Assembly (NCBI GenBank): GCA_000388065.2
Contig: KB932206.1
Length of the DNA: 64,000 nt
Strand: one strand, 5' to 3'
Origin: Fonticula alba ATCC 38817
Lineage: Eukaryota; Protista; Nucleariida
A model generated the notes under the pieces. It had not been told where the DNA came from. It ran no database searches and saw only the letters and a program-made list of their open reading frames with translations. Both the position numbers and the translations under genes were made by a program. This document shows positions 1 through 63,875 of the stretch, piece after piece (the first letter of the stretch is position 1; each line of letters opens with the position of its first letter).

Positions 1-937
1 GACTGCCTGGCCTGCTCGTTGCCTCGGTGCAGGGCGTGCAGCCGGTCGGCCATCACACCCACCTGCTCGTGCATCACCTCGTAGAAGGGGCCGCGCAGGG
101 CCTCCTGGTGCTGGAAGACCGGGCTCAGGAGATGCCGGTAGTGCTGCCACCGGGGTCCGCCATCGCTCAGCAGGATCCCCTCGGGCCCGAGCCAATTCGC
201 CAGCAGGTCGTACGAGAAGGACTTCGCCGCGTTGGCCATCTGCGAAGCTGGCACCGCGCCGGGTGTGAGCCAAGAGAAGAGGCATCCCCAGGGGATCTCG
301 GTCAGAACATGGCTGTACTTTCAACCACTGCGGCGAGTGGACAAGGGGGCGTGGGGGACTCGGCGCGTCGCGCGCACCACCGATGACGGCCTTGATGGCA
401 TTCGGCGAGTAGACCTCAACCCCGGGGATGGGGCCAATCCAAAACTGCCCATACCCCGGGGTGTTGGGGTGGCAGGAGAGAGCCGTGAAATGGGCCTCCT
501 GCTTTTTGGGGTCCCTCGGGACCAGGCCAATGTGACCCATAAGCAGGGAACAGGGGCGCGAGGGCAGCTGGAGGATGGCTGGGAATTTCTGCGCTCGGGA
601 CAGGGAACAGGGCGGGTAGGGGGGGGGGGGGGGAGGTGAGTTGGTGAGCCACACCGATGGCCGGGTGCAGACATCCAGGGCAGCGACCGAGGCCGGCAGC
701 GGGGGGAGGGCAGGAACAAGCAAAGCCACACGATCAAGGTCGCACCCTGCGATTGGTGATGTAGATGTTGGCCACGAACAGGGTGCCGCAGACGATGACC
801 GCAAGGATCCCGGCCGCGGCCGAAGTGGAGAGCATGCCGATGGCGGCGATGCAGCCAGCACCAACTGCGCCGGCCGTCAGGGGCAACAGCAGCGCCGGCT
901 TTTGGTCCGGGACAGGCAAGGTGTTTTGGCCCATCAT
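1..937 (-). CDS. Cytochrome P450, CYP4-clan-like, copy A (5' part only; continues beyond the left window edge)
   Basis: Exons 937-746, 588-378 and 247-<1, with GT-AG introns in the same positions and phases as copy B. N-terminal TM anchor (MMGQNTLP...ILAVIVCGTLFVANIY). Exon 3 is nearly identical to 6748-6994 (WLGPEGILLSDG). Confidence 0.85.
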
Positions 938-1797
938 CAGAAGACCGGGAAGGTAGCTGCCCGGTAATAGGTGAGCAAAGAAGGGGGAGGGGGCCGGGGA
1001 GGACAGTGAGGGAATCGACGACGGCCTGGGTCGGGAAGGTGCCCGCTCTTTGGTGCCCCGCTGGGGCCAGGAACGAGGCACGGGGGGGGGGGGGGGGGGG
1101 CTTTCGCGTGGGCGTGTGCCGGAGTACTGCCAGGAGGCCTCCCGGGGCCGGGGGCCGGTGGAATCCAGCAAGAGGTGTGCCACGCCAGCTGACGAGCCAA
1201 GACACGGGTGTTGATTATGAGACAGATCATGGCAGGAAGAAGAAGCCACGGGAAAGGCGCAAGTCCGGGATCGAGCCGTGGCTTTCAGACAGGGGGGGCC
1301 ATCTTACACCGACGACAGCCCCCGGAGTTCGTCCCCCTGGGCGCCGCCCGACGCTCGGCACCAGGCATACGGGCAATGAGATGGCCTCCCATCGGGGGAG
1401 GGTGGCCGGGGGGGGGGGGGGGGGGGCAGACACACAGGCACCCGGCGACCCACTGAAGGGGTCGCTGGCTCCTCCAAACCCACGGGACTCCCCTGTCGGC
1501 GAGCAACGGGCCGGGGCAACGAGTCCGCGTGCGGCCCTTTCCCGGGAGCAATCTACTTTGCTCATACAAACACACGTGCATCGAGTGCCGGCCGTGAGCG
1601 CCCCTCCCTCCCCCTGGGAAAGTGTGAAGGAACCTCCCCCCCTCCTCCCGGTTCCCGACCGACGCCAGCCGCGGGTTGGCCGGGGAGGGCGCNNNNNNNN
1701 NNTGGGGCTTGGCATTGGACCTCGAGGGGGGGAACATGCTCGGCCGAGGAGGAGAGGGAAGGAGAAGGGTGGGCGAGGGCGGCGGGGTTGGACGGAC

Positions 1798-2431
1798 AGC
1801 GAGTGACAATCCCCTCGATACTGACTAGACTACCGAGGTAGTGCGCGGCCAGCATCCGAGGGTTGAGCGAGTGCGCCCCAAGTGGCCCGGTGATGCCGAT
1901 GCGCAACTGGCCCTCGGTCTCGCGCGCGTACAGATGGTTGATGGACTCGACCATTTCACGCAGGGCCTGCTCGAAGGCAATCAAACGAAGGGACGGGTTT
2001 TTCAGGAGGCTGCAAGACGGATTAGTGGCCGGGAAGACGGGGGGGGGGAGCGACAAGCAGGCACGGGGTGCTGCTGGGCGGCTGCAATCGGCCGTACATC
2101 TTGGCCTCGGCCGCGTTGAAGGCGCGCAGATCGTCAATATTTACAATCAGCCGAGTTTGGCGCTTGTTGATCATCTGGGCGACCAGGTCGCGGTAGTTGA
2201 CCGAGAGATCCTGCGGGCAATGAAGAGTCAGGGGGGTCAGGAGCCCGGCGGCGACAGCGAGGGCAGGCAGGAAGGGGGGGGGGGAGGGCGGGGCAGGAAG
2301 AAGCCCAGGATGGGTTTTCCTCAGCAACGTACCGTGCTATCGAGAAACTGCGCATACAGTCGAACGACCAGCGTGTCGATGTCGACATCGCCGCTTGCCA
2401 CGGCGGAGGAGGTCGAGAGGAAGGTGCTCAT
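1798..2431 (-). CDS. MCM3: MCM3 DNA replication licensing factor, N-terminal fragment only (about 140 aa), ending just before an N-gap
   Basis: Exons 2431-2333, 2210-2098 and 2009-1798 splice in frame. They encode QTRLIVNIDDLRAFN and LGAHSLNPRMLAAHYLGSLVSIEGIVTR, typical of the MCM3 N-domain. No AAA+ exons were found downstream. Confidence 0.8.
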
Positions 2432-4818: not shown

Positions 4819-6026
4819 TCAGGCCTCGGTGGGGGGAACACTGGCGCGCGGCTTGGCCTGCAGCCAGACTGGGTCCACCGAACCAAGGGCCACCTCCAGC
4901 AGGGCCAGCGCCTCGGAGCCCTCGACCGGCTTCTCCGACCCGGTGTTGTCCGGGCCACGCTGGCTGGCGGCCCCGAAGAACTGGAACTCATGCAGCAGCC
5001 GGGCCATCATGACGCGCTGGCCCAGCTCGGCGTACCGGCGACCGAGGCAATTGCGCGGCCCGGCCGAGAAGGGCATGAACTCGTACGGGCTGATGGGCTT
5101 GTCCTTCTCGCCCGGGGGGAGGGGCTGCCCGGCGCGGTCGTGGTGCACGTCGAAGCGCAGCGGCTCGAAGCGCAGGGGATCCGGCCAGACCGCCGGGTTC
5201 CGGTGGAGGGCCAGGATCTCCACATGGCAGTTGACCCCGGCAGGGATGGTGTGCCCATCGATGTCGACCTCCTGCGTGGTGGTCTTTTTTTTTTCCGAGC
5301 GGGCCGGCAAATCGCAGCGTCGTTAGAAACCGAGCATGGTCTGCCCGGGGAGGGGGCGGAGGAGGGGAAGGGCAATAAAGATCCGCCCGCCCGAAAGGCG
5401 ACGGCTGGCGCGCCAAGTGTGGCGGAGTGGGGTAGGGGGACATGTGGGGCGGGAGGGAGCAAGAATACGCACACGGGCGATGGTCGGCACGCTCGGGTAC
5501 ATGCGCATGACCTCCTTGATGAAGCAGTCCAGGCGGTGGAGCCGGCGCAGCTCGTCCGGCCCGGTCGGGGGGTAGGCCTCGTCGCCGCCATGCTGGCGGC
5601 GCTTCTCGCTCCAGAAGGCATCCAGCTCCGCCACAACCGGCTCCAGCTGACGGGGATGCCGCGACGCCAGGTACAGCGCCCAGCCGGCGAAGCTGGAAAT
5701 GGTGTCGTGCCCGGCGAACATCAGCGTGTCAACCTCCTCCCGAAGGGACTTGTCGTCCAGGAGCAGGGCCTCGATCTTCTGGCGGGCCTCCTTGGTGGGC
5801 GCCTCGGCCAGCTGCTGGCGGAGCTTCCCCTGCTCGAAGAGCAGCACGTCCAGGAAGGCCGGGCGCTGCTTGGGCTTGCCGGAGAAGGTGTCCAGCTGGG
5901 CGGCGGCGGCGGCGGCGGCGGCATCTTCGCCGGCGACGCCGATGCTGGACATGTCGATCTGGCTCTTGGCCAGCAGCTCGCGCCGCTGCTGGATGACCTT
6001 GTTGGTGAAGTCTTGGTGGTGATGAT

Positions 6027-6068
<42 letters not shown>

Positions 6069-7386
6069 CCACGCCCATGCAGGCCGACAGGGATGATGAA
6101 GAGAGCAAAGTGGCGGCACATGAGAAGGTTGGTAAAGGGGCCGGAAGTGCCGATGCAGGAGCAAGGGCGACAGGCTGCCGGGGGGGGGGGAAGTCGCTGA
6201 CGGCGCGTTTAGAGGGCTCTGCAAGGGGACCGCGCACCGTGAATGATCTTCAACTCGCGCTGGTAACGTCTGCCCAGCGGGGAGAGGCCGAAGATCAGCG
6301 GGCTCATCAGCCACGGCTGGCGGAAGCGCACGATGGACATTTCCTTCATAAAGTCCACGGCTCGGGTGTAAGCAATGTGGGCTTCCGAATGCTGGGCTGC
6401 GTGGGTTTTTTTTTGAGGTGCGTGGTCAGGCGAGCGAAGCCGGCTGTGATGTCGAGCAAGACGGACAAGCCGGCACAGGCACATGAGGGGAAGGCAAGGG
6501 AGGAGGGAAACAAAACACCCCTCGCACGAGCCCCATGTCGAACGCACAGTTCAGCTGGAAGCCCATGGCGGCCTCGCAGATGATGTCCAGCATGCAGGAG
6601 GAGAACCAGTCAAACACATCGAAGGCCGTGGCCGGCTGGCCNNNNNNNNNNCAGTTCAGCTGGAAGCCCATGGCGGCCTCGCAGATGATGTCCAGCATGC
6701 AGGAGGAGAACCAGTCAAACACATCGAAGGCCGTGGCCGGCTGGCCTGACTGCCTGGCCTGCTCGTTGCCTCGGTGCAGGGCGTGCAGCCGGTCGGCCAT
6801 CACACCCACCTGCTCGCGCATCACCTCGTAGAAGGGGCCGCGCAGGGCCTCCTGGTGCTGGAAGACCGGGCTCAGGAGATGCCGGTAGTGCTGCCACCGG
6901 GGCCCGCCATCGCTCAGCAGGATCCCCTCGGGCCCCAGCCAATCCGCCAGCAGGTCGTACGAGAAGGGCTTGGCGATGTTGGCCATCTGGGAGGCTGCCG
7001 TCCGAGGCCGGGCAGGCATTTGCCGGGGGGCGAGTGTCAGGAGGTCATGGCAAGGGAACTTCGGCAGACCGAGAGCTGGCGACCCATACCGCCAATGATG
7101 GCCTTGATGGCATTCGGCGAGTAGGTCTCCACGCCGGGGATCGGGCCAATCCAATACTGCCCATACTCCGGGGCGTGGGGGTTGCCAGGCAGAGATGTGT
7201 AATGCGCCTCGACCTTCCGCGGGTCAGCCGGGACCAGGGCAACATGCCCCATGATGAGGGGATGCGGCCGGCTGGGCATTTGGAGGATGGAGGCGAATTT
7301 CTGCCCCACAGGCGAGGGTCAGTTGCGCAGGAGAGGCGAGGCGAGGCGAGGGGGACAGGGGGCGGGGGGGGGGGNNNNNNNNNNNN

Positions 7387-7420
<34 letters not shown>

Positions 7421-7649
7421 CTGGAAGAAGCGGCCGGCACGAGCATGTGCAAAGGGGTACCCTGCGGTTGGTGACATAGATGTTGGTGACATAGAGAACA
7501 CCGCAGACGATGATGGCCAACAGTCCGGCAGCCGCCGGCGTGGGAAGCATGACGACCGCCGCCACAAGCCCGGCACCAAGGCCCCCGACCGCGAGAGGGA
7601 GGACTGGCACCTGCAGGCTGTCTTCGGACTCCTGATGACTTGAGACCAT
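4819..7649 (-). CDS. Cytochrome P450, CYP4-clan-like, copy B (about 634 aa, 6 exons)
   Basis: Exons 7649-7461, 7300-7090, 6994-6548 (includes a 95-bp assembly duplication plus gap), 6396-6238, 6011-5473 and 5283-4819. Motifs: I-helix EEVDTLMFAGHDT, ExxR EVMR, PLRF, heme FSAGPRNCLG. Confidence 0.93.
6028..6065. repeat. (CA)n microsatellite in CYP copy B intron 4
   Basis: Visible perfect dinucleotide repeat about 15 nt from the acceptor. Confidence 0.9.
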
Positions 7650-9284: not shown

Positions 9285-11893
9285 TCACTGGTCACCCAGG
9301 GTCGCCTCGCCAGTGGGCGCCTGTGGCAGGTGGAAGAGGTCCGAGATGATGCCGTCCACACCGAGGGAACGGGCCTTGGTAGCCTCCTTGGCGTCGTTGT
9401 TGTGCGAGCCCCACGTGAAGAGGCTCAGGCCCTTGAGGCGGAGTCGCAGGGAGAACGGGGTGGGCGATCAAGACAAAGGCCGATGTCAGCGTTTGGGCGG
9501 GGGGGAAAAAAAAACACGGGCGCCGCTGCACAGGCGTCTCCCCTGTGCGTGGGGGGGGGGGGCAACACCGCCAGCGAAGAAGGGAAAACACATGACCGGG
9601 GCGCACAAATTTCTTGACCAAAGTAATGAGCTCCGGCTGCTCGACCAGCGGCGCGGTGAAAGAGCAGACCCCATGCAGGCGCGCAACCCGCGCAAAGGAG
9701 ATGGCCGCCGCAACTGACATGGACCGAACATCGCCATATGCCCCGTACACAGGATGCCCGCCGGTGGTCAGGAAGATCACCGGAATGGCCGACTGCTTGA
9801 GACGAGCGCTTTTGCACGTCGCACAAACGAGGGGAGGGTCAATTGGGGGCGGGGAAACACCATGTGCAGGGGGAGGGGGAGGGGGGGGGGCAACGGCGGG
9901 ATTGTCGCGAGCGAGCAAGGGCCGAGACAGTGGCCTGGCCTCACGTACAGGTAGCAAATCTCGGGGTCGAAGCTGGAGATGACGATCGGCCGGGCACAGA
10001 TGGGCTGCGGGGCCAGGGCCACGCGCAGGATCTCGTCCAGCATGAAATTGCGATCGGCCCACTGGTCGAAGGTGTTCACCTCATCCGGGACAATGGCCGG
10101 CGTGGGGAACTTGATCTCGATGTTGAACATCAGCCCGGGCGGGAGAGCTTGAAGGGGTGGCGTGGGGGAGCGAGTGAGTTGCCGACCAACCAGGAGGGCG
10201 AGGGATGGAGGGGGGGGAAGCGCGAAGGGCGAGGCGCCACGCAAACGGGCCGGATGCCGGACGCCCCCTTCCTGCCGAGATGCATCGATACACACACACA
10301 CACGCAAACATGGGCACAAAATGGGGGACGCACTGTCGAAAAGCTGCTGCAGAGACGGCATGTAGCCGGGGGCCGGGACACATGGGGTGGTGCTGGCTTG
10401 ACCGGAGGCAGTGGCCACGCCGCTGGCATTGGGGTCCTGGTTGATGGGGCAGACAGTGCCGGCCGCGCGGCCGTGACCCGGCTCGGTGGACATGCACTCG
10501 AAGCCCGGATCGCCGCCGAGGTCCGCCGGCTGGCCATCCGCCCCGGGGACCTCGCCAGTCAGGCCCAGGTGCAGGGAACGCAGCTGCTTGGTGGACATCT
10601 GGTTCAGATTGATGACCACATCCTCGAAGCCCTGGGCACCGGCATCGCCATCGGAGCGCACGGTGCCACGCACGCGAGCATCAGTGTTGTGGTAAACGAC
10701 CACCTGCTTGCACTTGCTCAGGAGCACATCGAATTCCACGCCATCGGCGCCGTTGCGCGATGCGCGCAAAAGAGACAGGAGGGTGTTCTCTCGCAGGGGA
10801 GACAGCCAGGCCGGCGAGGGGCTGACATTGCGATCGGATGCGCCGGCCCCCCGGTGCCCCACCCGCCGGGCCCCCAGCCCGCTGACTGGCCCGTAGGTTG
10901 GAGCCGGCAGGGTGACCCCGGCCAGCTCGTCGGCCGAGGACCCCGCCGTCGAGGGGAGGCTGGTAAAGGGGAAGTCCGCCTGCATGCCGGGCGAGGGGAT
11001 CGTGGCCGAGGCGGCCAGGGCCAGAACGGACGCCGGGAGCGCCCGGCCAATGAGGACATCCGCCCGCAGGCGCCCGGCCGGCCGCGAAGGGCAGCCAGCC
11101 GAAAGGAGGGCCGCCTCGATGATGTCGGCCGACTTGCCGGCAAACTGCCCGGGGGTGACGGTGGCCGAGGCCAGCAGCATGGGCACCGGCGAGGTGCTGC
11201 CCTCGGGCCCGCTCGGGGCGGAGAAGATCTCGAAACACATGAACACCTGCTTCAGGGCGGCCTCCTGAAGCCGGAGTGTGAACTCGAAGCTGTCGCCGGC
11301 CGACTGAGTGGGCAGCAGAGCGAGGGCACAAGCCGCCCAAGGGGAAACCGGGTGTCAGGGGGTCGATCGAGACGGGGGGAGAGGGAGGGGAGGGAGGAAG
11401 CAAAGGAGGACTGGGGGAAGGGGCGGGAGAGGGAGAGAGGGAGATGGAGAGATGGAGAGAGGGGGAGAGAGAGAGAGAGAGAGAGACTCACCCAGGGGAC
11501 GCCGAACTCCGGCTGGATGGTCGGCACGAAGGAGGGGAACGGCCCGACCGGGGTCCTGGCCGAGGGGGGCTGGGGGCCAAGAGCCTCCAGCAGTGCCAGG
11601 TACTTGTCGCACTGGCTGTCGGAGAGGGCGCCATAGTTGCAAATGTTGATCTTCGAAAGGCCACACGAGAGGAGTGAGTGAAGCGGAAAGGGGTGGGGGA
11701 AGCGAGAAGAGGGAAACCCCATGAGACGCAAGGAGCAAGCCAAGGGAGCTGTACCTGCGGAAGGAGTGCCGCCGGCGCGTTGGCTTCGCCCGCCGAGAAG
11801 ACGCTCATTTTGACCGAGAGGGCCGAGGTGTCGGCGCCATTCGGGAGTCCAGCGGCCAGCAGCTCGATCGGGTTCGTGTCGCTGAGGCGTACA
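9285..11893 (-). CDS. Glycerophosphodiester phosphodiesterase, GPCPD1/Gde1-like (5' incomplete)
   Basis: In-frame exons 11893-11755, 11650-11492, 11303-10334, 10147-9949, 9808-9607 and 9431-9285. Motifs VGHRG, ENT, EFDV..YH, NIEIK, SSFDP, LFTWG, GVDGIISD. The first visible exon starts in phase 2, so upstream exons lie in or beyond gap 12055-12549. Confidence 0.85.
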
Positions 11894-12054
11894 CTTGTCA
11901 GGGCCGGAGGGGGGAGGACATGGTGGGAGGGGGGAGACGGAGGGTGTCCCATGCGCACCGAACGCCGAAGCGAACGCGAAGCTCGGCCTGCCCCTCGGAT
12001 AGAGGGAGCATTTGGTCATTGGCCGACTTGGGACGGAGAACCGGGAGGGGGGGG

Positions 12055-27692: not shown

Positions 27693-27730
<38 letters not shown>

Positions 27731-40521: not shown

Positions 40522-43500
40522 CTACACGCGCAGGGCAGCTGGACGGCCGGCCGCCGGGTCTGGTCCTCCGCCACCTGGCACGACATCCGGGTAGCCGAAG
40601 TCCAGGAGAATGCGGCGACGCAGGGCCGGCTCTAGGTCCGCGGTGTAGGAGATCACTCGGCCATCCCGGCCGGCGCTTACCAGGAAGGTGTCCCCATCAG
40701 GCCCGGCCCCCAGGCCCAGGTCGGCAAGCTGTGCCATACAGGCGTCCGGCAGCAGATGCCCGATGGGTGTCGGGGTGGCGACACTGGCGGGGGCGCTTCT
40801 GGCAGCGACAGAAGCAGCGGCCGCAGCGGCCGCCGTGGTGGTGGTATTGGTATTGGCAGCGGTGGCAGCCGGCCATCCTGGTGACTGGTCCGTTGGCCAC
40901 CCTGCCGGCACCGACTGGGCCGGCGCCGGGATGGCTGCCAAGGCGGCTGTCCCCGGGAGGGTGCCATTCTCCGCTGGGCCGCACCGCCGGCGCCGGCGCC
41001 GGCGAGCATCGGCCTCCGGCGAGGAACGGGGCGTGTTGGGCCCGGCGGCCGGGCGCTTGGCGTCCATCCCCGAGCCGGGGGCCCGGCGCCGAGTGGCCGC
41101 CAGCAGCGGGCTTGCCAGGTGCTTGAGCCCGGTGACCACATGCCCGTGAGACTCCCAGCTGTATGCCACTTGTGGGGCAGGCTGGCGGCTGGGATCGGCC
41201 AGGGATACGGCCAGGCGCCCGGGAGAATTGGCGCCAGCCACTCGGGCTGACAGCAGGCTACGCAGCTCATAGGTATATACCCGGCCGTCGGAGCCCCCGA
41301 GGAAGAGGAGTCGCGCGTCGGCCTCACGACCGGCGGCCGCCGCGGCACTGGCCTCATCCTCGCCTCCGTTGGGGGTGCAGGGCTCTGTCTCGGCCCCGGG
41401 GCGGATCTCATCGACCAGGAGCAGCGAATGCTCGGTCAGTGGGGTGGTGGCGATGCTTTTGGCCCACACGCCCTCCGGGAGGGTGATTTCCAGGAGCGGG
41501 CTGTCAGCCAACCGGGCGCTCGGGTCGGCGGGGTTGACAACTGCGCCCATGTGCAGGAAGGGTGTCAGTAAGAGCCGACATGTGTGACTTCCCTCCTCCC
41601 GTCCAGGAGGGAGGGGGGGGCGGAGCAGGAACGGCACGGGCGAAAGGGCGCGCTTTTCGCCGGGCCCCGGGGAAAGACCGCGAAGAGGATCACAGGCCAC
41701 CACAACGCACAGACCACCTTGCCGCAGGACAGCGAGCAGGCCACCAGGGAAAAGGCGCTGACCGACACGCCTGGGACCTCGCACAGGGTCACCACCGGCG
41801 AGGCGAACAGCCATACCGCCAGCTCGGTCGGGGCGGTTTCCTCCTCCGGGTGCAAGCGCCAGAGGCGCACGCTCCGGTCGAATGAGCACGTCATGACCAG
41901 TGGCAGGCCGCCATGCGAGTATGCCGCGCGGATGGCCGCCGGGATGGACCGCTCCCCGGGGACAAGGCCCTGCTGCTGTGAAACATACTCCGGGGCAAAC
42001 AGCTCCAAGGTGGCCGGGAACCGCAGGAACACCGAACAGTAGATGTCCGACGCGTGCCCCGCAAGCTGGTGGGCGACGGCAGGGGCACGGAGGGCAGCGA
42101 AGGGCACGGGCGATGAGATGGCCCGAGGAGGGGACCGGGGGGGGGGGGGGCAGGGGGGCGGCCACATGCGACCGTGGGTCCGGCATGGGCGAGGGGCACA
42201 GGAGGCGGGCGTACGGTGCAAAGCTGGCGCAGTTCGGGCGTGCTGGTCCGGCCAGCGGCCGACACGGTCCAAATGTGGACCATGGTATCGAAGCCGCCGG
42301 TGGCGATGAGGACATCCACGCCGCCGGACCGGGCCGTGTCGAGACCGGCGGTTTCCGGCCGCGTCCATGAGCCGATGGTCACCAGCGGGCCCTCGTGGGC
42401 CGGAAGGGCGACATGGGCCGGTGATCCGCCGAGCGCCAAGGCCGGGAAGAGATCCCGGCCGGGGGCGGCGGCTGGCCCGGGGTGCGCCGAGCTGGCCGCC
42501 GGCAGGAGCCACGTGTAGGTGACGGACAGCCAGCCGTGCGAGTCGCCGGTCAGGGCGATGCTCCGCCCTGCGGCCGGCTCATTCGCCGGGGCCGAGGCGG
42601 ATGCCCCCCGATCGAGAGACACCAACCGCACGGCCAGGCAGGGCCCGCGAGTGGGAATGCTCCCGCCACGAGCCGGCGCCCGGCGCAGTGGCAGCGCCAG
42701 CACCTGGCCGGCGGGTGTCGGTGCCGCGGCCGGCGGCGGCGGCGGCGGCGGCGGCGACTGGTCGCGACCCGCGCGCGCGGCCTGGGGCGACAAGATCAGT
42801 GACAGCTTGTCGCCCAGCTGGCGGAAGAAGGCCAGCGCCGGGCGCACACTCTCGGGCCGAGGCATGCCCTCCTCCAGGGCGGGCAGCGGCGGAGCCGGGG
42901 GGACATCGCCCGGGGCCTGGGGCTGGGCCTCATCGATGGGGGGGCCGCCGGCGGCCACCGGCGACATGCCCAGATCGTCGGTGGAGTTGGGCCCCGTCGG
43001 CCCGGGGCCTGGCGGCGCAGCGGGGCTGGCAGGCGGCCCCGTGTCGAACCAGCTAAGCAGACGCCGAATGCCCGGGGGGACGTTGGAGGGCCCCTCGGCC
43101 TGGGAGGCCGGGGTGGCCGAGGCAAGGGGTGCTGTGGCTGCGGCCGGGGCAACGCCGGCAGCGGCATCTGATCCGGCCGGCGAGATGCCCTCGGGCGTGG
43201 GCGGCACCACGCGGCCCGGGCTGGCCTTCGCCTCGCGCTGGCATGTGGCCACGGCAGTGGCGTCGATCGTTCCGCCGGCCGACTTGGCCAGGTGCCGGAG
43301 AATTGGCGAGTCCGGCAGGGTGATCTGGCTGAGGAGAACCCCCTCTTCGGGGTCCAGGCCGGGAGTCGGATCGCCGAGGTCCATCCGACTGACCAGGATC
43401 GCGCGGCTGTCCTTGGCTGCGACGAGTATCCACCCTGCGTCGACGTCGAGATCGAACAGGTCCACCGGGTCGGGGCGGGTGTCGGGACTGTCCTCGCGGT

Positions 43501-44231
43501 GGGTCTCCGGTGGCACACTGAGCGGCCCGGGGGCCAGGCACGAGGAGGCATCTTTCGGGTGAATGCCAGGAGCCGGGTGAGTTAGTGCGAGGGCAGGGAG
43601 CGGGGCGGCATGACAATGGGGTGATGCACATGTGTGCGTGTGCATGTGTGCGTGTGCATGTGTGCATGTGTGCATGTGTGCGTGTGCGTGAATGAGGCAG
43701 CGGACAGCGAAGAGGCAGAGGAGGATGAAGAGCGAGCACAGGGCGCAGAGGGCCGAGGCAAGCGGGAACATCGCGCGCACCGGACTCGGGTGTGGGAAGT
43801 AGGGCCGTGGCCGCCTGGCCGGCGAGCAGGCCGCGCAGGGCAGCCCGCTGCCCGGCCTGGCGGACAAGGAAGTAGTTGGCCTGCGCCAGACCAAAGCGAA
43901 AAGCCAGGCTGCGGTGGCAGTGCTCCATGTACACAAAGCGCCACAGGTTGAAGGGTCGCGGGGGCCGGTCGCGCGGGGCGCTGAGATCATTGCGCCAGAT
44001 GTTGACGTCGCATTGGTCGAGCTCCGGCGCAAGCCAGCCCTGGCGAGCGCAATGGGCACGCCAAAGGACCGGGTCATCTTGACAAGCCACGCGCCAGCGT
44101 TCACTGACCCCGGCGCAGGCCAGCAAGTCGGCCACCGGCAGGTGGAGGAGCACGCGACGAAAGAGGTCTGCCGGCAGGACCACAGCCGGGTCGGTGCACG
44201 GTTGTCGGAGAGGCGAGGGGGCTGGTGTCAT
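40522..44231 (-). CDS. F-box protein with WD40-like repeats and long low-complexity insertions
   Basis: F-box LPADLFRRVLLHLPVADLLACAGVSERW. WD-like motifs ATGGFDTMVHIW, TCSFDRSVRLW, GGSDGRVYTY, VSAGRDGRVISY. Exons 42065-41711 and 41540-40522 are well supported; intron 1 boundaries (about 43880-43551) are uncertain. Confidence 0.75.
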
Positions 44232-46959: not shown

Positions 46960-48522
46960 TTACAGGAAGTAGTCGGTGGTGGTCCGGCGGTGAGGGGTGT
47001 CTGGCCCGGGCTGGTTCGGGGCATCCTTGAAGATGGTGAACTGCGGCATGAGCGACTCATCCAGCTTGAGGATGGCGGCCACATTGTTGCACCGGTAGCA
47101 GTAGTTTGGCGCCGACCAGACGGTGACGATGCGCTGGTCGAACATGTACTTGTAGCCCTCCATGACCAGCTGATGTGCACGAGCGATGAGCGAAAGGCCG
47201 TTGGCATCGTTAAACTGTGAACGATTCCGGGCAGGAGGGAAGGGAGCAAAGATGGGACACGTGTGTGCGTGTGTGCGTGTGTGCGTGTGTGCGTGTGTGC
47301 GTGTGTGTGGAGGGGGTGGTGGTAGAAGAGCGGCGAATGAGTCAGCGAACACCGAAGGACCGAACGGAAAGGGCGACCCGGAGGGAGGATGAAAGGAAAG
47401 CGCAACGAGGAGAAGGGAGCAAGAGGGGCAAACAAGCAGGCACGCACGCCCTCCACCACGTCGCGGCCGAAGAGGAAGCCAGCCCCTCGAGGGCTGACAC
47501 CCCAACTGCTGATTTCCTCCGGGTCGGACCAGAGCAGGTCGCACATGGCACCCTCGTGCGGGACCTCCTGCTTGCGGTCAATCGTCCGGATCTGATCCAG
47601 GGTGTTGATGGACGGCGACAGACCACCATGCACACAGAACACCCGGTCGGACACAATGGCCGAGAGACTCAGGTGGTCGAACACCTCGCAGCAGTAGCGC
47701 CACACATTGACCGAGTTGTACTTGCGCACACACTCGTCGTAGAAACCGTAGATCTGGGTGATCTGTCGCGACTCGTGGTTCCCGCGGATGAGGGTGATCC
47801 GGTTGGGGTAGCGAACCTTGAGGGCCAGCAGCAGGAGGAAAGTCTCGATACTGAAGTGGCCACGGTCGACGAAGTCACCTGTCGGGGCAGCGAAAAAGGG
47901 AGGCAGAAAGGAAGGTGTGTCGGGAAATCAGTAAGGAGGCACAGGCGAGGGGGGCCGGAAGGCGGAGGAGGAGGGGAGGGGGTAGAGGGGAGCGGGCTTG
48001 AAAACGCACCCATGAACATGTAGTTCTCGTGGGGCACCTCGCCACCAATCTTGAAGAGCTCCATCAGGTCCCAGAACTGGCCGTGAATGTCGCCGCAAAT
48101 CTGCCAGTCGCAAGCCGGGCGGGAGGGAGGGAGGGCGGGAGGGCGATGGGGGGGGGGGGGAGTCAGCTCCGGGCGCGAGGACGGGAACAACAGCACACAA
48201 GGGGGCAACAGCAACTGGGCAAGCCCCGGAGCAGCGGGGGCGCAGGCGCACAATGACCGGCGGGTCGACGCGCTGGACGTTGCTCTCCTCGACGAGGATC
48301 TCCCGCGCGCGAGAGCACAGCTGCTTGACCTCCCGCTCGGAGATCAGCTCGCAGCGCTTCAGCTTCTCGATGGCGCTGCGAATGGCAGTCCAGCAACGAG
48401 GCGGATGATTAAGCGATGTCAGGGGAGACAGCGGATGATGTCGAGCTGGCAGCACATGGGAAACCAGGAAGAGAGGGAGGCAGAAAGAGGGAGAGAACGC
48501 ACGCATCAAGATTGAGCGACAT
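46960..48522 (-). CDS. PPP4C: Serine/threonine protein phosphatase 4 catalytic subunit
   Basis: Exons 48522-48503, 48375-48252, 48100-48010, 47878-47448 and 47214-46960, all phases consistent. Motifs [27 protein letters not shown]-terminal DYFL. Confidence 0.93.
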
Positions 48523-53018: not shown

Positions 53019-55192
53019 ATGTCGCTCGTGCGTCTCACATTGCTGGCATTTTTTTTCTCTCCTCGCCTCCTCCCCTGCCCCAGTGTCCCCCCCCCCCCCC
53101 CCGGCCAGTGAGTTGCTTACTCACCCACCCTCGCACAGAGCTTCAAGACCGCCGTCGGCAACGTCGTGGAGGGCGCCCTCACATACCCCTTCGTCAAGCT
53201 GGCCCAGCTGAAGTTCACCCTCCAGGCGACCAAGGACTGCCCGGACCTGGCTGCTGCCCAGGAGCAGGCTGTCACCGAGCTCTTCGAGCTCATCAAGAAG
53301 CACGGTACGGTGGCCCTGCCATGTCGTGCCTTGGCGCGCCCGTTGCCTGTCCATGCTCCTCCCCCCCCACCCGGCCCATGGTGCCACTTGCCGCTTGCTC
53401 TGACTCACCAGCGGTCCCGACTGATCGCCTCAGATATGGCCCCCTTCTATGAGGCGATCTGCGCCTCCGGCCTTTGGCCCAAGCCTCTGGACGCGACCCT
53501 GCTTGCTCAGCTGAAGGAGAGTGCGTATGCTGTCACCATGTGGCCGCCACCGCCGCCGCCGCCGCCCCATTGCTAAATGCCCCCCCCCCCCCTTCCCCTC
53601 CAGGCAACACGGCTGCCCTTGCGCGCTTCGATGCCGAGCTTGAGACCGCCAAGGAGTCCGCTGGACCGTCCGAGGTCCAGGCGGCCAACCAGAAGATCGC
53701 CGAGTACAAGGCCTTCATCGGTGCCCCGGTGCGTGCGCGCGCGGCCTCCTGTCGTCCGTGGCCTCGCCCGTTGATTGTGCCCCGAATGCTGACCCCCCCC
53801 CTGGGCCCTTCCCCCGGCTGCTGCTCCCTTCGCCGATGGGGTGCGGCGGTGCACATGCAATCAGGACGCGGCCGCCGCCCTGGAGACCGTCCTCGAGAGC
53901 ACGGTCGGTGCCGGCCCCCGCCTGGACAACGTCCTCCTGCTGGCTCGGTTTGCCTTTTCCCTGGCTGACAATGCCCTGATTGGCAAGTACATTGACCGCG
54001 CCAAGAAGTGCGTTTGCCCCCCCCCCCCGTCCCCCCCTGCCCACGGCACACAGGGGCCGCCCCATCGCACCCCCTCCCCATTTTGCCCCGTCTGCGCGCC
54101 CTGCCTGTGTGCACCGCTCACCTCCCCCTCCCCCCATTGGCTTCTCCTGCCCTCTCGTCTTCCTTCGTGCCCCCCCCCCCTTTCTCAACCAGGCTGATTG
54201 ATGCCGGTGGCGACTGGGACCGTCGCAACCGCCTGAAGGTCTACGAGGGCACCTATCTCATGTCCATCCGGGACTTTACTCGCGCGTCGGAGCTCTTCCT
54301 CTCGGCCCTGCCCACCTTCACCAGCACTGAGGTACCTTGCTTTGGCATTTCCTCGCACCCCCCCCCCCCCGCCCTCGCGCCGCTTTCTCACATCCTCCCC
54401 ATCCCCACCATCCCACAGCTCCTGCAATATGACACCTTTATCTCGTACTCCATCCTGATGTGCCTGTTCACCCTGGACCGCGAGATGCTCAAGTCCAAGG
54501 TGCGCCCTCGCCTCTCTGTCTTGCGCCCGCTGCCTTGCTTCTCCGCCCCTGACGTCTAACCCCGCCCTGCTTCTGTGGACCCCCGTCAACACACGCAGAT
54601 TCTCGACTCGCCCGAGGTCCTTGAGGTCGCCATCAAGGTGGCCCCCTTCCTGAACCTGGCCGAGTCTTTCTACAACTGCGAGTACCGGGCTTTCTTCACC
54701 CACCTGGCCGAGGTGGAGGCTCTCCTGAAGAAGGATCTTTTCCTCTTCCCCCACTACAAGTATTACGTCCGCGAGATGCGCATCCGGTACGCGACGGCCA
54801 TGCCCCCACGCGGCCACCCTTGCGGCGCCGGTCACCGACCCATTTGGCCCCCATCCATTCACCTTCTCCCTCCCTCCCTCTCGCTCTCCCTCTTTCTCTC
54901 TGCCTTCCCCCTCGCCACTCTGGCCAGTGCTTACGCCCAGTACCTGGAGCCGTACAAGTCGGTCAAGCTCCAGAGCATGGCCGACACCTTTGGCGTGTCG
55001 CCGACCTTCATTGATGAGGAGCTGTCGCGCTTCATCTCGGCCGGGCGCATCCACTGTGCCATCGACGCCGTGTCGGCCACCATCGCCACCCGGCGCCCGG
55101 ACAACCGCAACAGCCACTACCGGTCGATTGTCCAGGAGGGGGACCTGCTGCTGAACCGCATCCAGAAGCTGGCGCGTGTGACCGATCTGTAA
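53019..55192 (+). CDS. RPN7: 26S proteasome regulatory subunit RPN7 (PCI domain), 9 exons
   Basis: GGDWDRRNRLKVYEG, YVREMRIRAYAQYLEPYKSV, GRIHCAID, QEGDLLLNRIQKL. The first coding exon is 9 nt (ATGTCGCTC, 53019-53027). Confidence 0.93.
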
Positions 55193-55496: not shown

Positions 55497-55533
<37 letters not shown>

Positions 55534-55967: not shown

Positions 55968-58900
55968 ATGCCGCCCGGCAAGAAGCCCGCCCCGTCGTTG
56001 GACGACTGGGCCGATGACCTGCCGGAGGCCGTCCTCAAGCAGGCGGCCGCCCAGGCTGGCCCCGCGCGCGCGGTGGTCTCCTCCCTCTTCACCAATAACC
56101 CGACGCTCGCCAAGCGCTCGGACCCGCTGCCGGACGTCAGCACCCTCGAGCGTACGAACGCCGCGTTGGCCGAGGCCAACTTCGACACCATGGGCCTAGA
56201 CCCGCGGGTGGTCCGCGCCCTGCGAGATCGCCTTGGTGTCCAGCGTCCGACAGCCATCCAGCACCAAGGTACACATCGCGAGCCCCATGTCCCCCCCCCC
56301 CTCCCCCCCTCCCTGTCCCCGTCCCCGTCCCCGTCCCCGCCCTGTGGCTCGTGCTCTCCCGCCTCATCCCCTGCGACTTGCCTGCTCCCCCCCCCCCTCC
56401 CCCACTTACCTTTTGTTCCTCCCCTCTTGCCAGCCATCCCGGCCATTCTCAGTGGACAGGATGTCATCATGCGCGCGCAAACCGGCTCCGGCAAGACGCT
56501 GTCCTTCCTGCTGCCGATTCTGCAGCATCTTTTGACCCTGTCGCCGCAGGTCTCCCGCGGTGATGGCGCGCTGTGCATGGTGATTGTGCCGACGCGCGAG
56601 TTGGCCGCCCAGACCCAGGCGGTGCTGGAGCGCCTAATCCAGGCCGCCGGCTGTGTGTGGATCGTGTCCGGGGCTCTGGCCGGTGGCGAGCGCCGCAAGG
56701 CCGAGAAGGCTCGCCTGCGCCGGGGGCTGAACATTGTCATCGGCACGCCGGGTCGGCTGAAGGATCACCTGGATCGGACGGCCGGCATGGACCTTTCGCA
56801 GGTTGGGTGGGTGGTGCTGGATGAGGCGGACCTGCTTCTGGATCTGGGTTTCGAGAAGGACGTCCGTGAGATCCTCAAGACCATCGACGAGGTGCGTGCT
56901 CCTCCCTTGCCTCCTTCCCTCTCGCCCTCTCGCCCTCTCGGCCTTCGGCCTTTGCCTTTTGGCCTCCCTGTGTTTTGTGTTAGGCGCCAGGACTGACACC
57001 TTGGCGGCACCATCGTACCCCTGCCGGGCCTGCTGTCCCTCTTCTCCAGCGTCGGGCTGTTCGCCGGATCGGCGTCCCGCGGGATCGGCGTCAGACTATC
57101 CTCTGCTCGGCCACCATCTCCAAGCGCCTGCAGGCCATCACGCAGTCGGCCATGGAGTCGCCGGTGTACATCTCCACCGACGAGACTCTGGTGGCCGGGG
57201 CTCAGCCGGCACCGGATGCCGAGGCCGCCAGCACCACCGCCCCGATGGTGATTGAGCCCGCCCCCGACATGGCGCCCGATGCCGGGTCGGATGTTGCCGG
57301 CGATGCCCCCAGTAAGGAGGGCGAGGATGCCAAGATGGTGGACACTGAGCTGGGTGAGCGCTTCCACGTGCCGGCGCAGCTGCTGCAAATCTACTATGAG
57401 CTGCCGACCAAGCTTCGTCTGGTGACGCTGGTGACGCTGCTGCAATCGCGTCTCGGCGTGACCGAGGATCAACTCCAGCGCCTGGACCAGACGCTCGCCG
57501 CACAGGCGGCTTCCGAGACCGCCGGTCCGGAGGGTGCCGATGCGGATTCGACCTCCAAGCCCACGGCCGCGACTCCCAAGCCGGCTGGCACGGCTCCCAA
57601 GTCGGCCGCGGCGCTGGCCGCCGAGAAGGCCCTCGGCAAGCGGCCCTCGGCCACGGACAAGCCCGCGACTGATGGCGCGCCGCCGGCTGCGGAGCCGGCC
57701 GATCCGGCCCTCGGCTTCGCGGATCCCAAGCGTGGCATTGTCTTCCTCAGCACCACCGACAGTGTGGACTTCCACTTTGCCCTGTTGACTCATGCGGCCA
57801 GTCGGCCGGTGCGCATCGACAACTCCGGTGCGGTGGTCCTCTTCGGGGAGAAGCCCGCCGATGGCGAAGCCGCTGGCGACGGGTCCGGCAGCGATTCCGA
57901 CGACGACGCCGCCGCCGCCGGGGCCCAGGGGTCCAGTGCTTCCGGGCCGGCCGACCCCGACCAGGGTGCGTCTCTCTTCGATTCGGACGAGGAGGATGGC
58001 GGTGCGGCTGGAGGTGGGTCGCGCGCGGCGCGGGCCCGTCGCCAGGGCCGTGCTCGGCACATTGCAGAACTGTCGAGCTCCTTCGACCCGGTGACCGGGA
58101 AGCCTCTGCAGCGCCAGGCGGCGTTGACCCTGTCGGCGTGGGCCACGGCCCCGATCCTCGGTGGGGCACGGGTATACCGCCTGCATGGGGACATGGCGCA
58201 GGCCGATCGGATGGCCACCTTCCGAGCATATCGCGAGGGCGCGGCCCGGGGTGAGGCGGCCGTGCTGCTTTGCTCGGATGTGGCCGCGCGCGGAGTGGAC
58301 CTGCCACAGGTGGACTTCGTGGTGCAGTACGACGTGGCCACCAGCGTGCGGGACTACGTCCACCGGATTGGCCGGACCGCGCGTGCCGGGCGCGAGGGGA
58401 CGTCCATTGTCTTCCTGATGCCGCACGAGGCAGCCGGGTACACGGAATTCCTGCGCACCAACCATGAGTTGGTCCTTCTCCGGTCGGACTATGAGGCCAT
58501 GCTGATTGGCACCTGGGGCGGTCGCGCCAAGCGCGCGCACCGGCTGGCCGTCAAACAGGCGGTAGACCGGGCTCAGCGGCGTGCGGGACCCACCGCGCGG
58601 CTGAAGCACGAGGAGCGGGAGCGCATTCGTCGCGCGGTGCGCATGCCGGATTGGCGCGAGCTGTTGACCGGCTTGCAGCGGTCCTTCGAGCGGCAGACGT
58701 CGCACCGAGCGGTACGCCAGGACATCCTCGCCTTTTTGTGCCTTTCTTCCCTCCCCCGTCCCCCCCCCCTCTCTCTCTCTCTCTCTTTCATACACATGCA
58801 TACACTCTCTTTCTCTCACCAGCTGACCTTTTGTCGGTCTTGTGCCCCCCGGGGGGGTGGTTTGCTTCCTGCTGTGCCACTCAGTTCCACAAGCTTTCTG

Positions 58901-59435
58901 TCCGCGCGCTGCGGTCCTACATTCGTGCGTATGCCACGCATCCGAAGGCCATGCGGGCCTTCTTCCACCCGAAGCAGCTCCATCTGGGGCATTTGGCCAA
59001 GAGGTACGTCTCCCCGGGGTCTTTTGGTGGCATACCTTTGGTGCGGGTGCCCGCCGGGTGACAGGGGACATTTACTCACATTGGCATGTGTTCAGCTTTG
59101 GCCTGGTGGATGCGCCGTCTCGCTTTGCCGCCGGCAAGGGCAAGGCCGCCAAGGCTGCCTCCGGCGGTGGTGGTGCTGGCGGCGGCGGGTCTTCCCACTC
59201 TGCGAGCGCCGGGAAGAAGTCCGCCAAGGCCCTGGCGGCCGCGGAGAATGCAGGCACGGCAGCCATCGCCGCACACGAGTACAACCGTCTCTCCTTCGTG
59301 AAGCCCGTGCACGTGGCCCGCGAGGAGGTCAAGCGTGCCAAGCGCAAGGCGGCCTCCGATGAGTTCGGCATTAGTGCCGGCATCGGTGGCATGCTTTCGG
59401 GTCCGATGACGCGCAAGGCCAAAAAGCAGCGTTGA
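55968..59435 (+). CDS. DBP7: DEAD-box RNA helicase DBP7/DDX31 (about 959 aa)
   Basis: Exons 55968-56268, 56434-56891, 57050-58711, 58885-59003 and 59096-59435. Motifs AQTGSGKT, PTRELA, GGERRKAEKARLRRG, DEAD, SAT, ARGVD, HRIGRTAR and FHPKQLHLGHLAK. Confidence 0.92.
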
Positions 59436-59884: not shown

Positions 59885-60557
59885 TCACTCCAGGGTCTCC
59901 AGATGCCGGAAGCGCGTGAGGATGAGCTGCTTCTGGGTCTCATAAAGCTCACCATTGAGGATCAGCTCGTCCAGGATGTGGTACACCTTGTGGAAGAAGA
60001 AGATCAGGTCCAGCTCCGAGACATTCTGGAAGTACTGGTCCAGGGTCTCAACGAAGAGGTGAATGGCCTCCAGGTAGGCGAGGACGTTGTCCTCGGAATC
60101 CACACACAGGCAGAAGAAGAGCCCGGCGTAGCGCTTGTACACGAGCTTGTGGGTGCGGAACTGAGCAACGCGGCATCAGTTTACCGAGCAAGTCAGGAGA
60201 GAGGGAGAGAGGGAAAGGGGGGAGAACGGGAGGGGGGACTGGGCTTGAGGCCCCGCCGCCGTGCGCGAGAACGAACCTCAACAAAGTTGGACTGGTACTT
60301 GTTGTCGCGGGCGGCGACAACGCGATGCACGTCGTTCTTCAGCTTGATCTTCTCCGCATCATCGAAGGGGACATACCACTTGGCGAGACGGGTCTTGCCC
60401 TGGCGGTTCTGGACAAGCAGGAAGTGGATCTGCGCAATGGGCGCGCCGGGAATGCCCAATCCCAGAGCGGCCGGGTGAAGGCGGTGTGAGTGGGAAAGTG
60501 CTGGCGCAGGGGGCGAGCGGGGAGCGAGCGGGGAGCGAGGCCCAGGGCGCGCACCAT
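59885..60557 (-). CDS. AP2S1: AP-2 adaptor complex sigma subunit (143 aa)
   Basis: ATG-only first exon 60557-60555, then 60429-60277 and 60160-59885. NRQGKTRLAKWY, RDNKYQSNFVEF, YKRYAGLFFC, NVSELDLIF. Confidence 0.92.
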
Positions 60558-62142: not shown

Positions 62143-62175
<33 letters not shown>

Positions 62176-62333: not shown

Positions 62334-63247
62334 ATGCTCTCCCGCATTGCCACTTCCGGTATCACCGCCACTGCTGCCCGGACTTTTACCACCTCCGCTG
62401 CCGTCGCCGCCGCCAACATGCCCAAGGATTTCAACCAGATCGCCAAGTCCCTCGAGGAGCACAAGGACTCCGCCGGGAACCTCCCCCTCCTGCGCTTCGG
62501 CGACGTTTCTGACCCCGCGGTCATCGTCCTCCAGGTCCGTGCCTCTTCCGGGCTCCTGCCACGCGCCCGGCCGTGTCTTTTGCTGACCCCTCTGCATGCA
62601 TCCCCCCCCCCCCCCCCCCCCCCCCCCGCCCCCCACCCCCGCCCCTATCCTCATGCACCATGTCGCACCAACAGGAGTGGTGGGGCATCAACGGCGACGT
62701 CAAGGACCACGCCCGGCAGATCGCCGCGCGCGGCTACGAGGCCGTCATCCCCGACCTCTATCGCGGCAAGTCCACCCTGGAGGTGGCCGAGGCCGAGCAC
62801 CTGATGAACGACCTGGACTTCGCCAAGGCCATCACCGACCTGGACGCCCTGATCAAGCATGTCCGCGAGACCAAGGGCTGTGCCGGGGTCAACCGCCCTG
62901 TCGTGCTGACTGGCTTCTGCATGGGCAGCATTCTGGCCCTGGCCACTGCTGCCAAGGCGGAGAACCGTGTTGACGGTGTTGTTGGTACCTACATCCTCCT
63001 TGTTCCTTTCTTCTTCTTTTTTTCCCCCCCCTCGGTGCCTGGCCACGGCTGGCATGTCTCTTCTCCCGTCCTCCTCTCCCGTCCTCCTCTCCCTTGTATC
63101 GCACGTGTTGACCACGATCGCCCGACGTCCTCTTGTCTCCCCCTTCCTCCTCCCTGCCCGATGCTGGTCATTCACGCATAGGCTTCTACGGCGTCCCCTC
63201 GGCCGATGTTGCCGACCTGACCCAGATCAAGGCGCCGGTCCAGGTAC

Positions 63248-63311
<64 letters not shown>

Positions 63312-63875
63312 GGTTGTCCTCGTGCCTTGCTCCTGTCGTCGCAAAATGAGCCCAGATTGCCACGCCACATGCTCCTGCTGCTGCGCCTGCCCATGCCCCA
63401 CGTCCAGCGACGCATGAGGAAGTCCACCACTGACACTGCCATTCCCCCCTGCCCTAGGCTCACTTCGGTGTCAAGGACCCCTTCGATATCTCCGACCCCA
63501 AGGCCTCGGCTCGCGTGCGTCCGCCTCCTCTCCCCCTGCCCCGCCGTCTCTTTTTTTTTTCCCCATCCGCGCCACCTCCATTCCTTCCTCTATCTATCTC
63601 TCTCTCTCGCCGTGCCTTTGCTGACTGCCGGCGGTGCATCTGCCTGGCCCATGCCCTGCCTCCCGATCCAGCTGGCCGTCATGCTGGCCGCCTCTGGCGT
63701 GGAGCACGAGATCTTCAACTATGAGGAGCAGGGCCACGGCTTCCTCAACAGCTCCGAGTGGTATGCCGGTATGCGGCCGATCCTCGGCGCCCCGCCCACC
63801 GACCCGACTGACATCGAGCTGGCCTGGTCTCGCTTCTTCGCCTTCGTCGATAAGGTCACCAACAAGGAGAAGTAA
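62334..63875 (+). CDS. Dienelactone hydrolase family protein (carboxymethylenebutenolidase-like) with predicted mitochondrial presequence
   Basis: Exons 62334-62534, 62675-62984, 63182-63243, 63458-63514 and 63672-63875. Motifs QEWWG, PDLYRG, GFCMG (Cys nucleophile), AHFGVKD, QGHGF. Confidence 0.9.
63246..63309. repeat. (CA)n microsatellite directly after the donor of dienelactone hydrolase intron 3
   Basis: Visible dinucleotide repeat. Confidence 0.9.

What the first reader, a model, noticed from the sequence alone, without database searches (positions are those of the whole stretch)
740..63520. Non-canonical 5' splice-site consensus: GT[G/A/C]CG[T/C] with near-invariant C at +4
Seen: in about 51 introns delimited by frame continuity, about 48 donors have C at +4 (GTGCGT, GTGCGC, GTACGC, GTACGT, GTCCGT, GTACCT, GTACAC). 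All 8 RPN7 introns, all 4 PPP4C and all 4 DBP7 introns do. The exceptions are GTATGG (7089), GTAGGT (34055) and GTGAGT (11491). Established: most eukaryotes prefer A at +4 and budding yeast prefers U. This position pairs with U1 nt 5 and faces the m6A-modified A of the U6 ACAGA box, which is linked to METTL16/SNRNP27K. Inference: this lineage may have a rewired donor-recognition code, through altered U1 or U6 sequence or loss of U6 methylation. Caveat: where several GTs were possible I chose the frame-consistent one, which could add some bias.
Basis: partly seen in the sequence, partly recalled or inferred. Interest (0 to 1): 0.8.

Follow-up and report, generated by a model that had tools for sequence, protein, structure and literature searches.

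The report
Unusual intron-start code in Fonticula
Almost every intron in this stretch of the amoeba Fonticula alba starts GT-(G/A)-C-G-(T/C) instead of the usual GTAAGT; this is a real splice-signal dialect already known from a few other GC-rich protists, probably read by a matching one-base change in the U1 splicing RNA.

Summary
The window is Fonticula alba scaffold KB932206.1 (100% protein matches).

I rebuilt the gene models with a dynamic programme that knew only GT..AG, codon bias, and each annotated gene's range and product length. It saw nothing of donor positions +3 to +6. It gave 52 usable introns, and 49 of them (94%) have C at +4. C makes up 47.5% of intron interiors and 37-40% of position +4 at non-donor GT sites (p about 5e-13).

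cDNA contigs confirm 11 of the 12 RPN7 and DBP7 junctions. Gap-free homology confirms 10 more junctions.

- No U1 or U6 gene lies in the window, and I could not reach U1, U6, METTL16 or SNRNP27K of this genome.
- A U1 5' end with G at position 5 would separate real donors from decoy GT sites far better than the canonical one (AUC 0.96 against 0.75).
- An earlier follow-up in this scan, on other DNA of this genome, reports such a U1. I did not test that.
- The same U1 change with +4C donors is published for Mastigamoeba. Thecamonas and Mamiellales have +4C with a canonical U1.

This is a new member of a known kind.

The parts
1..937 (-). Partial P450 paralogue that runs off the window start. 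Introns 502-745 (donor GTGCGA at 745) and 248-377 (donor GTGCGC at 377).
   Evidence: Read from the minus strand and placed by its match to the exon ends of the neighbouring P450. Both intron positions and phases are shared with that gene. The annotation fuses this piece to an MCM gene.
1285..2431 (-). MCM_N gene model (191 aa). Introns 2211-2332 (GTACGT) and 2010-2097 (GTACGG). A third modelled intron, 1303-1663 (GTCGGT), is rejected.
   Evidence: Constrained DP. Gap 1693-1702 lies in the third exon and no frame scores as coding beyond it, so the last intron is probably an artefact of the model.
4819..7649 (-). Cytochrome P450 (640 aa as annotated). Donors at 7460 GTACCC, 7089 GTATGG (exception), 6547 GTGCGT, 6237 GTGCGC and 5472 GTGCGT.
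   Evidence: Range and length, model. Pfam p450 stretches end and restart at the 5284-5472 intron. The first two intron positions are shared with the paralogue. Gaps were dealt with.
9285..12011 (-). GDPD phosphodiesterase (618 aa). Donors at 11958 GTGCGC, 11754 GTACAG, 11491 GTGAGT (exception), 10333 GTGCGT, 9948 GTACGT and 9606 GTGCGC.
   Evidence: There is only one exon chain that translates exactly to annotated protein P0135. The blind DP gives the same chain. No RNA check was made. Four of the six acceptors are AAG.
22137..25200 (+). Short-chain dehydrogenase-like gene (750 aa). Donors at 22567 GTGCGT, 22799 GTGCGT, 23506 GTGCGC, 23789 GTGCGC and 24693 GTGCGT.
   Evidence: Annotated range and length plus the blind DP. 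The fully unconstrained DP found the same exons apart from three bases at one donor.
25499..28123 (-). Cas1-type acyltransferase (820 aa). One in-frame intron, 25976-26137, donor GTACGC.
   Evidence: The best Pfam Cas1_AcylT stretch stops at ORF residue 839, which is the last codon before the donor.
31759..36980 (+). Myosin with PH domain (1534 aa). Donors at 32101 GTACGC, 32739 GTGCGC and 34055 GTAGGT (exception).
   Evidence: The model equals annotated protein P0123. All three junctions align without a gap to the Capsaspora homologue, in LPRSK/IL, in the P-loop and in EECLM/PK.
37398..38873 (-). Hypothetical gene (404 aa). Donors at 38191 GTGCGT and 37714 GTACGT.
   Evidence: Annotated range and length plus the DP. 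The coding score is weak, so this is lowest-tier support.
39476..40461 (+). Hypothetical gene (285 aa). Donor at 39969 GTGCGT.
   Evidence: Annotated range and length plus the DP. The coding score is negative, so this is lowest-tier support.
40522..44231 (-). F-box protein gene (1053 aa). Donors at 43780 GTGCGC, 42214 GTACGC and 41710 GTGCGT.
   Evidence: Annotated range and length plus the DP, with the same result at both intron penalties.
46960..48522 (-). Donors at 48502 GTGCGT, 48251 GTGCGC, 48009 GTGCGT and 47447 GTGCGT.
   Evidence: Exons 2 to 5 align end to end to residues 13-52, 53-82, 84-226 and 227-292 of chain 2nyl_C, with no residue lost. That fixes three of the four introns.
53019..55192 (+). 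RPN7 (400 aa). Donors at 53028 GTGCGT, 53305 GTACGG, 53521 GTGCGT, 53729 GTGCGT, 54008 GTGCGT, 54332 GTACCT, 54500 GTGCGC and 54787 GTACGC.
   Evidence: The blind DP reproduces the annotated length. cDNA contigs show six GT..AG joints, and a loose end joins exon 1 to 53139. Intron 3 was hidden by the tool's repeat filter.
55968..59435 (+). DBP7/DDX31 helicase (959 aa). Donors at 56269 GTACAC, 56892 GTGCGT, 58712 GTACGC and 59004 GTACGT.
   Evidence: The model equals annotated protein P0121. cDNA contigs give three joints and a loose end at 59003 that continues with the sequence at 59096.
59885..60557 (-). AP-2 sigma subunit (143 aa). Donors at 60554 GTGCGC (directly after the ATG) and 60276 GTTCGT.
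   Evidence: Exon 2 aligns to residues 2-51 and exon 3 to residues 52-142 of solved AP-2 sigma chains, end to end.
62334..63875 (+). Dienelactone hydrolase (277 aa). Donors at 62535 GTCCGT, 62985 GTACCT, 63244 GTACAC and 63515 GTGCGT.
   Evidence: The Pfam DLH match ends about where exon 2 ends and restarts 40 profile positions later in the last exon, which fits the two small middle exons. A heavier intron penalty gives a different model, so the two middle introns are less sure.

Best explanation
The introns here are ordinary U2-type GT..AG introns of Fonticula alba, 77-327 nt long with a median of 150 nt. Their 5' splice-site consensus has shifted to G|GTRCGY with near-invariant C at +4. This is shown.

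The most likely reading is that this GC-rich lineage (window about 67% GC) replaced the A/T positions of GTAAGT:
- +3 became mostly G, which can still wobble-pair with U6 of U1.
- +4 became C, which is read by a compensating U-to-G change at position 5 of U1 (5' ACGUAC), restoring a continuous 6-7 bp U1/5'ss helix.

This second step is inferred here. It rests on an earlier, separately followed-up finding of this scan and on the Mastigamoeba precedent. How U6 ACAGAGA and its m6A deal with +4C after the hand-over is open.
For: - Organism identity.
- 49 of 52 donors have +4C against 47.5% C in intron interiors and 37-40% at decoy GT sites.
- The models were blind to +3..+6.
- 11 of 11 cDNA-confirmed junctions have +4C. 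9 of 10 homology-fixed junctions have +4C.
- +4 is C, not G (1 of 52), and +3 is a purine in 50 of 52. That fits pairing to G5 and U6 of a U1 better than plain GC pressure does.
- Mean duplex energy with AUACGUACCUG is -9.4 on real donors against -3.8 on decoys (AUC 0.96). With the canonical end it is -4.5 against -2.4 (AUC 0.75).
- Roy and Bowser 2022 report U1 ACGUAC with GUGCGC donors in Mastigamoeba.
Against: - I did not see U1, U6 or METTL16 of this genome. The U1 statement rests on another agent's unchecked note.
- Thecamonas and Mamiellales carry +4C with a canonical U1, so compensation is not required.
- The duplex calculation is partly circular, because the complement of a consensus always scores best.
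- +6 is C in 19 of 52 donors, which pairs with neither U1 version.
- Three real exceptions (GTGAGT, GTAGGT, GTATGG) show that the machinery tolerates other bases at +4.
- Only one 64-kb window was measured here.
Confidence: 0.72

Rival explanations
1. The +4C consensus is real but U1 is canonical or irrelevant. Donor choice would be made mainly at the U6/U5/protein stage, as proposed for other lineages that prefer a pyrimidine at +4 (Thecamonas, Mamiellales).
For: Roy and Bowser 2022 found a standard U1 in Thecamonas and in five Mamiellales despite their +4C preference. U1 ACUUACC is invariant across Saccharomycotina despite A/U switches at +4.
Against: The earlier follow-up s1-065344 reports a U1 with G at position 5 in this genome. 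A canonical U1 would bind the real donors at only about -4.5 kcal/mol and would barely separate them from decoys.
Confidence: 0.15
2. The driver is on the U6 side: loss or change of METTL16 or SNRNP27K, or a changed ACAGAGA box. That would make a pyrimidine at +4 preferable, and GC pressure would turn U into C. This is compatible with a U1 change as a second step.
For: Parker et al. 2023 link a pyrimidine (U) preference at +4 to absence of METTL16 and to SNRNP27K M141. +4 is a pyrimidine in 50 of 52 donors here.
Against: It was not testable here. The ACAGA box is invariant in every surveyed lineage. METTL16 is widely conserved in eukaryotes. T at +4 occurs only once, so this is not the yeast-type +4U state.
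Confidence: 0.12
3. The pattern is an artefact, from the reader's or annotator's choice among several GT sites, or simply from C-rich introns.
For: Introns are 47.5% C on the sense strand. The public annotation may have been trained on a donor model.
Against: The DP used no donor information beyond GT and still returned the pattern. cDNA joints fix 11 donors and homology fixes 10 more. 94% is far above the 37-48% background.
Confidence: 0.01

Closest known systems
Mastigamoeba balamuthi donors GUGCGC with U1 5' ACGUAC (Roy and Bowser 2022, bioRxiv 10.1101/2022.06.08.495308)
   Same: C at +4, mostly G at +3, and G at +5. It is an intron-rich, non-reduced genome.
   Different: It is an unrelated lineage (Amoebozoa against Holomycota). 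Mastigamoeba prefers C at +6, whereas here T (28) outnumbers C (19).
Thecamonas trahens and Mamiellales (Micromonas): +4C / GYGCGY donors with a canonical U1 (same paper)
   Same: A preference for C at +4.
   Different: Their U1 keeps ACUUAC.
Saccharomycotina switch from +4A to +4U, linked to METTL16 loss and SNRNP27K (Parker et al. 2023, PMC10581693)
   Same: The same intron position departs from A towards a pyrimidine. It is the same interface (U1 position 5, U6 m6A43).
   Different: There the base is U, introns are few, and U1 and U6 are unchanged. Here the base is C, genes carry up to 8 introns, and METTL16 status is unknown.
Entamoeba GUUUGU donors with U1 ACAAAC (Roy and Bowser 2022)
   Same: Co-evolution of the donor consensus and the U1 5' end.
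   Different: Different bases at +3 and +4, an AT-rich genome, and massive intron loss.

Membership tests
U2-type GT-AG spliceosomal introns | GT at the 5' end and AG at the 3' end, with removal from mRNA | tested here: met
   The ten joints at modelled introns in cDNA contigs read GT..AG, and two loose ends match the next exon. All modelled proteins are open and match annotated lengths.
U2-type GT-AG spliceosomal introns | A branch-point-like CTNAY motif shortly upstream of the acceptor | tested here: met
   39 of 52 introns have CTNAY in the last 70 nt, mostly CTGAC or CTCAC, at a median of 28 nt from the 3' end. This is a motif count only, with no chance control.
U12-type introns | Donor [AG]TATCCTT | tested here: not met
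   None of the 52 donors carries it.
+4C donor lineages with compensated U1 (Mastigamoeba type) | C is the majority base at intron position +4 | tested here: met
   49 of 52, p about 5e-13 against intron composition.
+4C donor lineages with compensated U1 (Mastigamoeba type) | U1 snRNA 5' end reads ACGUAC instead of ACUUAC | not testable with these tools
There is no U1 in the window or in fetched loci.
+4C donor lineages with canonical U1 (Thecamonas, Mamiellales type) | U1 keeps ACUUAC | not testable with these tools
Same limitation.
METTL16-loss-associated +4 shift (Saccharomycotina type) | U preferred at +4 | tested here: not met
   T at +4 in 1 of 52 donors.
METTL16-loss-associated +4 shift (Saccharomycotina type) | Absence of METTL16, or a change at SNRNP27K M141 | not testable with these tools

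The most novel reading that the evidence does not exclude
Fonticula alba has re-coded 5' splice-site recognition at both steps, convergently with Mastigamoeba and under GC pressure. U1 would carry G5, and the U6 side would also have changed (METTL16, SNRNP27K or m6A status). That would make it a natural system, next to the fungi, in which the U1-to-U6 hand-over works on a C at +4. It would also suggest a general rule that GC-rich genomes drive donors to GTGCGY and the snRNAs follow only in some lineages.
Probability: 0.2. Interest if true: 0.7.

Novelty: new member of a known kind. Interest (0 to 1): 0.5.

Why it matters
The U1 5' end and the GTAAGT-type donor are among the most conserved RNA-RNA contacts in eukaryotes, and documented departures are very few. 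A verified +4C consensus in the closest cellular relatives of fungi adds an independent lineage to Mastigamoeba, Thecamonas and Mamiellales. Together with the reported U1 G5, it would be a second, convergent case of the same compensatory change.

There is also a practical side. Gene finders and splice-site scorers trained on fungi or animals will mis-score Fonticula donors. A canonical-U1 model separates real sites from decoys at only AUC 0.75 here.

The full-text library I searched holds no description of Fonticula splice signals.

Tried and rejected
- My first unconstrained gene-finding DP fused neighbouring genes, split others into separate single-exon genes (RPN7 was not assembled) and read through stop-free GC-rich introns. 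I replaced it with a DP constrained by annotated range and product length. Without an intron penalty that version invented micro-exons. A penalty of 8 reproduced the three proteins whose sequences I hold.
- The look-up of the 865-aa DBP7 variant found nothing. That variant turned out to be an intron-4-retention isoform.
- The metagenome scan for a U1 with 5' ATACGTACCTGG followed by the 70K loop gave 5 loci. None is a U1 by Rfam, three are one identical non-U1 sequence and two look like coding DNA.
- Rfam on the window gave nothing at gathering threshold. At E-value threshold it gave only (TG)n matches to mir-297.
- The U1 5' 11-mer is absent from the window.
- Literature strings such as ACGUACCU returned only siRNA papers. 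The Acanthamoeba genome paper says nothing on U1.
- I could not obtain U1, U6, METTL16 or SNRNP27K of this genome by any permitted route.
Full report
**What the window is.** The window is about 67% G+C with twelve N gaps. It holds no tRNA or Rfam family. Long open frames with high third-position GC carry clear Pfam domains: P450, GDPD, Cas1 acyltransferase, myosin head plus PH, RPN7/PCI and DEAD helicase. A 554-residue exon of the helicase is 100% identical to a Fonticula alba protein. Its cluster holds the 959-residue H696_04010 and an 865-residue variant. Exact-protein look-ups place the window on GCA_000388065.2 scaffold KB932206.1, where window coordinate equals record coordinate minus 1527662. 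They also give the range, strand and product length of sixteen annotated genes.

**Gene models made without donor information.**
- the annotated gene range,
- the annotated product length,
- a codon log-odds table trained on Pfam-confirmed frames.

It allows any GT..AG pair as an intron and sees nothing of positions +3 to +6. It reproduced my by-eye RPN7 model. It returned exon chains that translate exactly to the annotated myosin and helicase. With an intron penalty of 8 it gave the only chain that translates to the annotated GDPD protein.

I dropped one, 1303-1663 (GTCGGT), which follows gap 1693-1702 where no frame looks coding. That leaves 52.

**The observation.** Base counts at the donor positions:

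| Position | Counts |
|---|---|
| -1 | G 35 |
| +3 | G 31, A 19 |
| +4 | C 49, A 1, G 1, T 1 |
| +5 | G 46 |
| +6 | T 28, C 19 |

GTRCGY fits 38 of 52 donors.

Intron interiors are 47.5% C on the sense strand. At non-donor GT sites, +4 is C in 39.6% of cases inside introns and 36.5% inside exons. The excess has a binomial p of about 5e-13. Across the whole window GTGCGT is 2.5 times more frequent than a first-order model predicts.

**Independent evidence for the junctions.** Four small runs from 2012 (two samples, one study) hold about half the sampled words of the RPN7-DBP7 stretch. Laid on 53015-59014, their contigs skip the modelled introns:
- Nine GT..AG joints lie at 53305-53433, 53729-53864, 54008-54192, 54332-54418, 54500-54598, 54787-54927, 56269-56433, 56892-57049 and 58712-58884.
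- A loose end before 53139 carries the sequence of exon 1.
- A loose end after 59003 carries the sequence that starts at 59096.

That is 11 of 12 introns, all with +4C. RPN7 intron 3 was hidden by the tool's repeat filter.

Homology fixes ten more junctions:
- The four larger exons of the PP2A-family phosphatase align end to end to one solved chain.
- The two coding exons of AP-2 sigma align to residues 2-51 and 52-142.
- The three myosin junctions are gap-free against the Capsaspora homologue, including the GTAGGT exception inside the conserved EECLMPK motif.
- Pfam stretches end at the Cas1 donor and at one P450 intron.

Nine of these ten have +4C. The remaining introns rest on annotation plus the blind DP. 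The two hypothetical genes (404 and 285 aa) and the middle of the hydrolase gene are the weakest.

**Assembly gaps.**
- Gap 6642-6651 lies between two perfect 95-nt copies. The annotated P450 therefore contains a spurious 35-codon duplication around four X residues. The frame is kept and no donor moves.
- Gaps 7375-7386 and 32214-32341 sit inside introns whose donor sides are supported by the paralogue and by homology.
- Gap 1693-1702 breaks the MCM_N model.
- The other gaps named in the finding are outside coding sequence.

Within the window I could only ask which U1 5' end would fit. With G at position 5, the mean duplex energy is -9.4 kcal/mol on real donors against -3.8 on 1511 decoy GT sites of the same genes (AUC 0.96). 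With the canonical U it is -4.5 against -2.4 (AUC 0.75). A or C at that position does no better. This is partly circular.

The base choice is still informative. +4 is C and almost never G, although G would be equally GC-rich and could wobble with a canonical U1. +3 is a purine in 50 of 52 donors, as expected for pairing with U6 of U1.

An earlier follow-up of this scan, on other DNA of the same genome, reports a genuine U1 gene beginning ACGUACCU (s1-065344, and a second locus s1-065360). I could not reach those loci and did not test this. At least seven other first-stage notes report the same donor pattern in other windows of this genome. The scan has therefore found this before on other DNA.

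**What is known.** Roy and Bowser (bioRxiv 2022) describe:
- U1 ACGUAC with GUGCGC donors in Mastigamoeba balamuthi,
- a +4C preference with a standard U1 in Thecamonas trahens and in Mamiellales,
- U1 ACAAAC with GUUUGU donors in Entamoeba.

Fonticula is not mentioned there, in Parker et al., or in the Fonticula-citing papers I opened. The kind of thing is therefore known. Fonticula appears to be a new member, and the first in the lineage that leads to fungi.

**Limits.** Only one window was measured. The RNA evidence is assembled contigs from one study. U1, U6, METTL16 and SNRNP27K were not examined. A metagenome scan for the variant U1 found nothing usable.

Noticed in passing
window 6547-6746: The 10-N gap 6642-6651 is flanked by two perfect 95-nt copies. 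This is an unmerged contig overlap. The annotated 640-aa P450 therefore carries a false 35-codon duplication with XXXX in the middle.
   Followed up: yes
window 1-2431, minus strand: A P450 paralogue fragment lies at 1-937. It is about 94% identical in protein to part of the P450 at 4819-7649 and shares its intron positions. It sits between an MCM N-terminal gene model (1285-2431, cut at gap 1693-1702) and the rest of an MCM gene. The annotation starts a 944-aa MCM product on the P450-like exons. This looks like a chimeric model or a mis-join.
   Followed up: partly
window 7089 and 7460 against 377 and 745, minus strand: At homologous introns of the two P450 paralogues the donors differ: GTATGG and GTACCC in one copy, GTGCGC and GTGCGA in the other. 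Donor sequence turns over quickly between recent duplicates.
   Followed up: partly
window 59004-59095: The public annotation carries an 865-aa variant of the DBP7 helicase that retains intron 4 and ends in it. That intron's donor, GTACGT, is the perfect complement of ACGUAC.
   Followed up: partly
window 54119-54141 and 54836: Contigs of three runs join 54141 to 54836 with 38 unrelated letters between and non-canonical TT..AC ends. Loose ends also occur at 54119 inside RPN7 intron 5. This may be a chimeric contig or another transcript. It is unexplained.
   Followed up: no
window 4819-12011, minus strand: AAG acceptors are frequent in the P450 and GDPD genes (7 of 11), while all 12 RPN7 and DBP7 acceptors are CAG. 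Two of the three donor exceptions also fall in these two genes, which have no RNA check.
   Followed up: no
window 4531-4591, 1081-1100, 2842-2863 and others: Long homopolymer G (or C) runs of 15-60 nt and (GT)n or (CT)n tracts are common in intergenic DNA and beside several gaps. The (TG)n tracts give weak false matches to mir-297.
   Followed up: no
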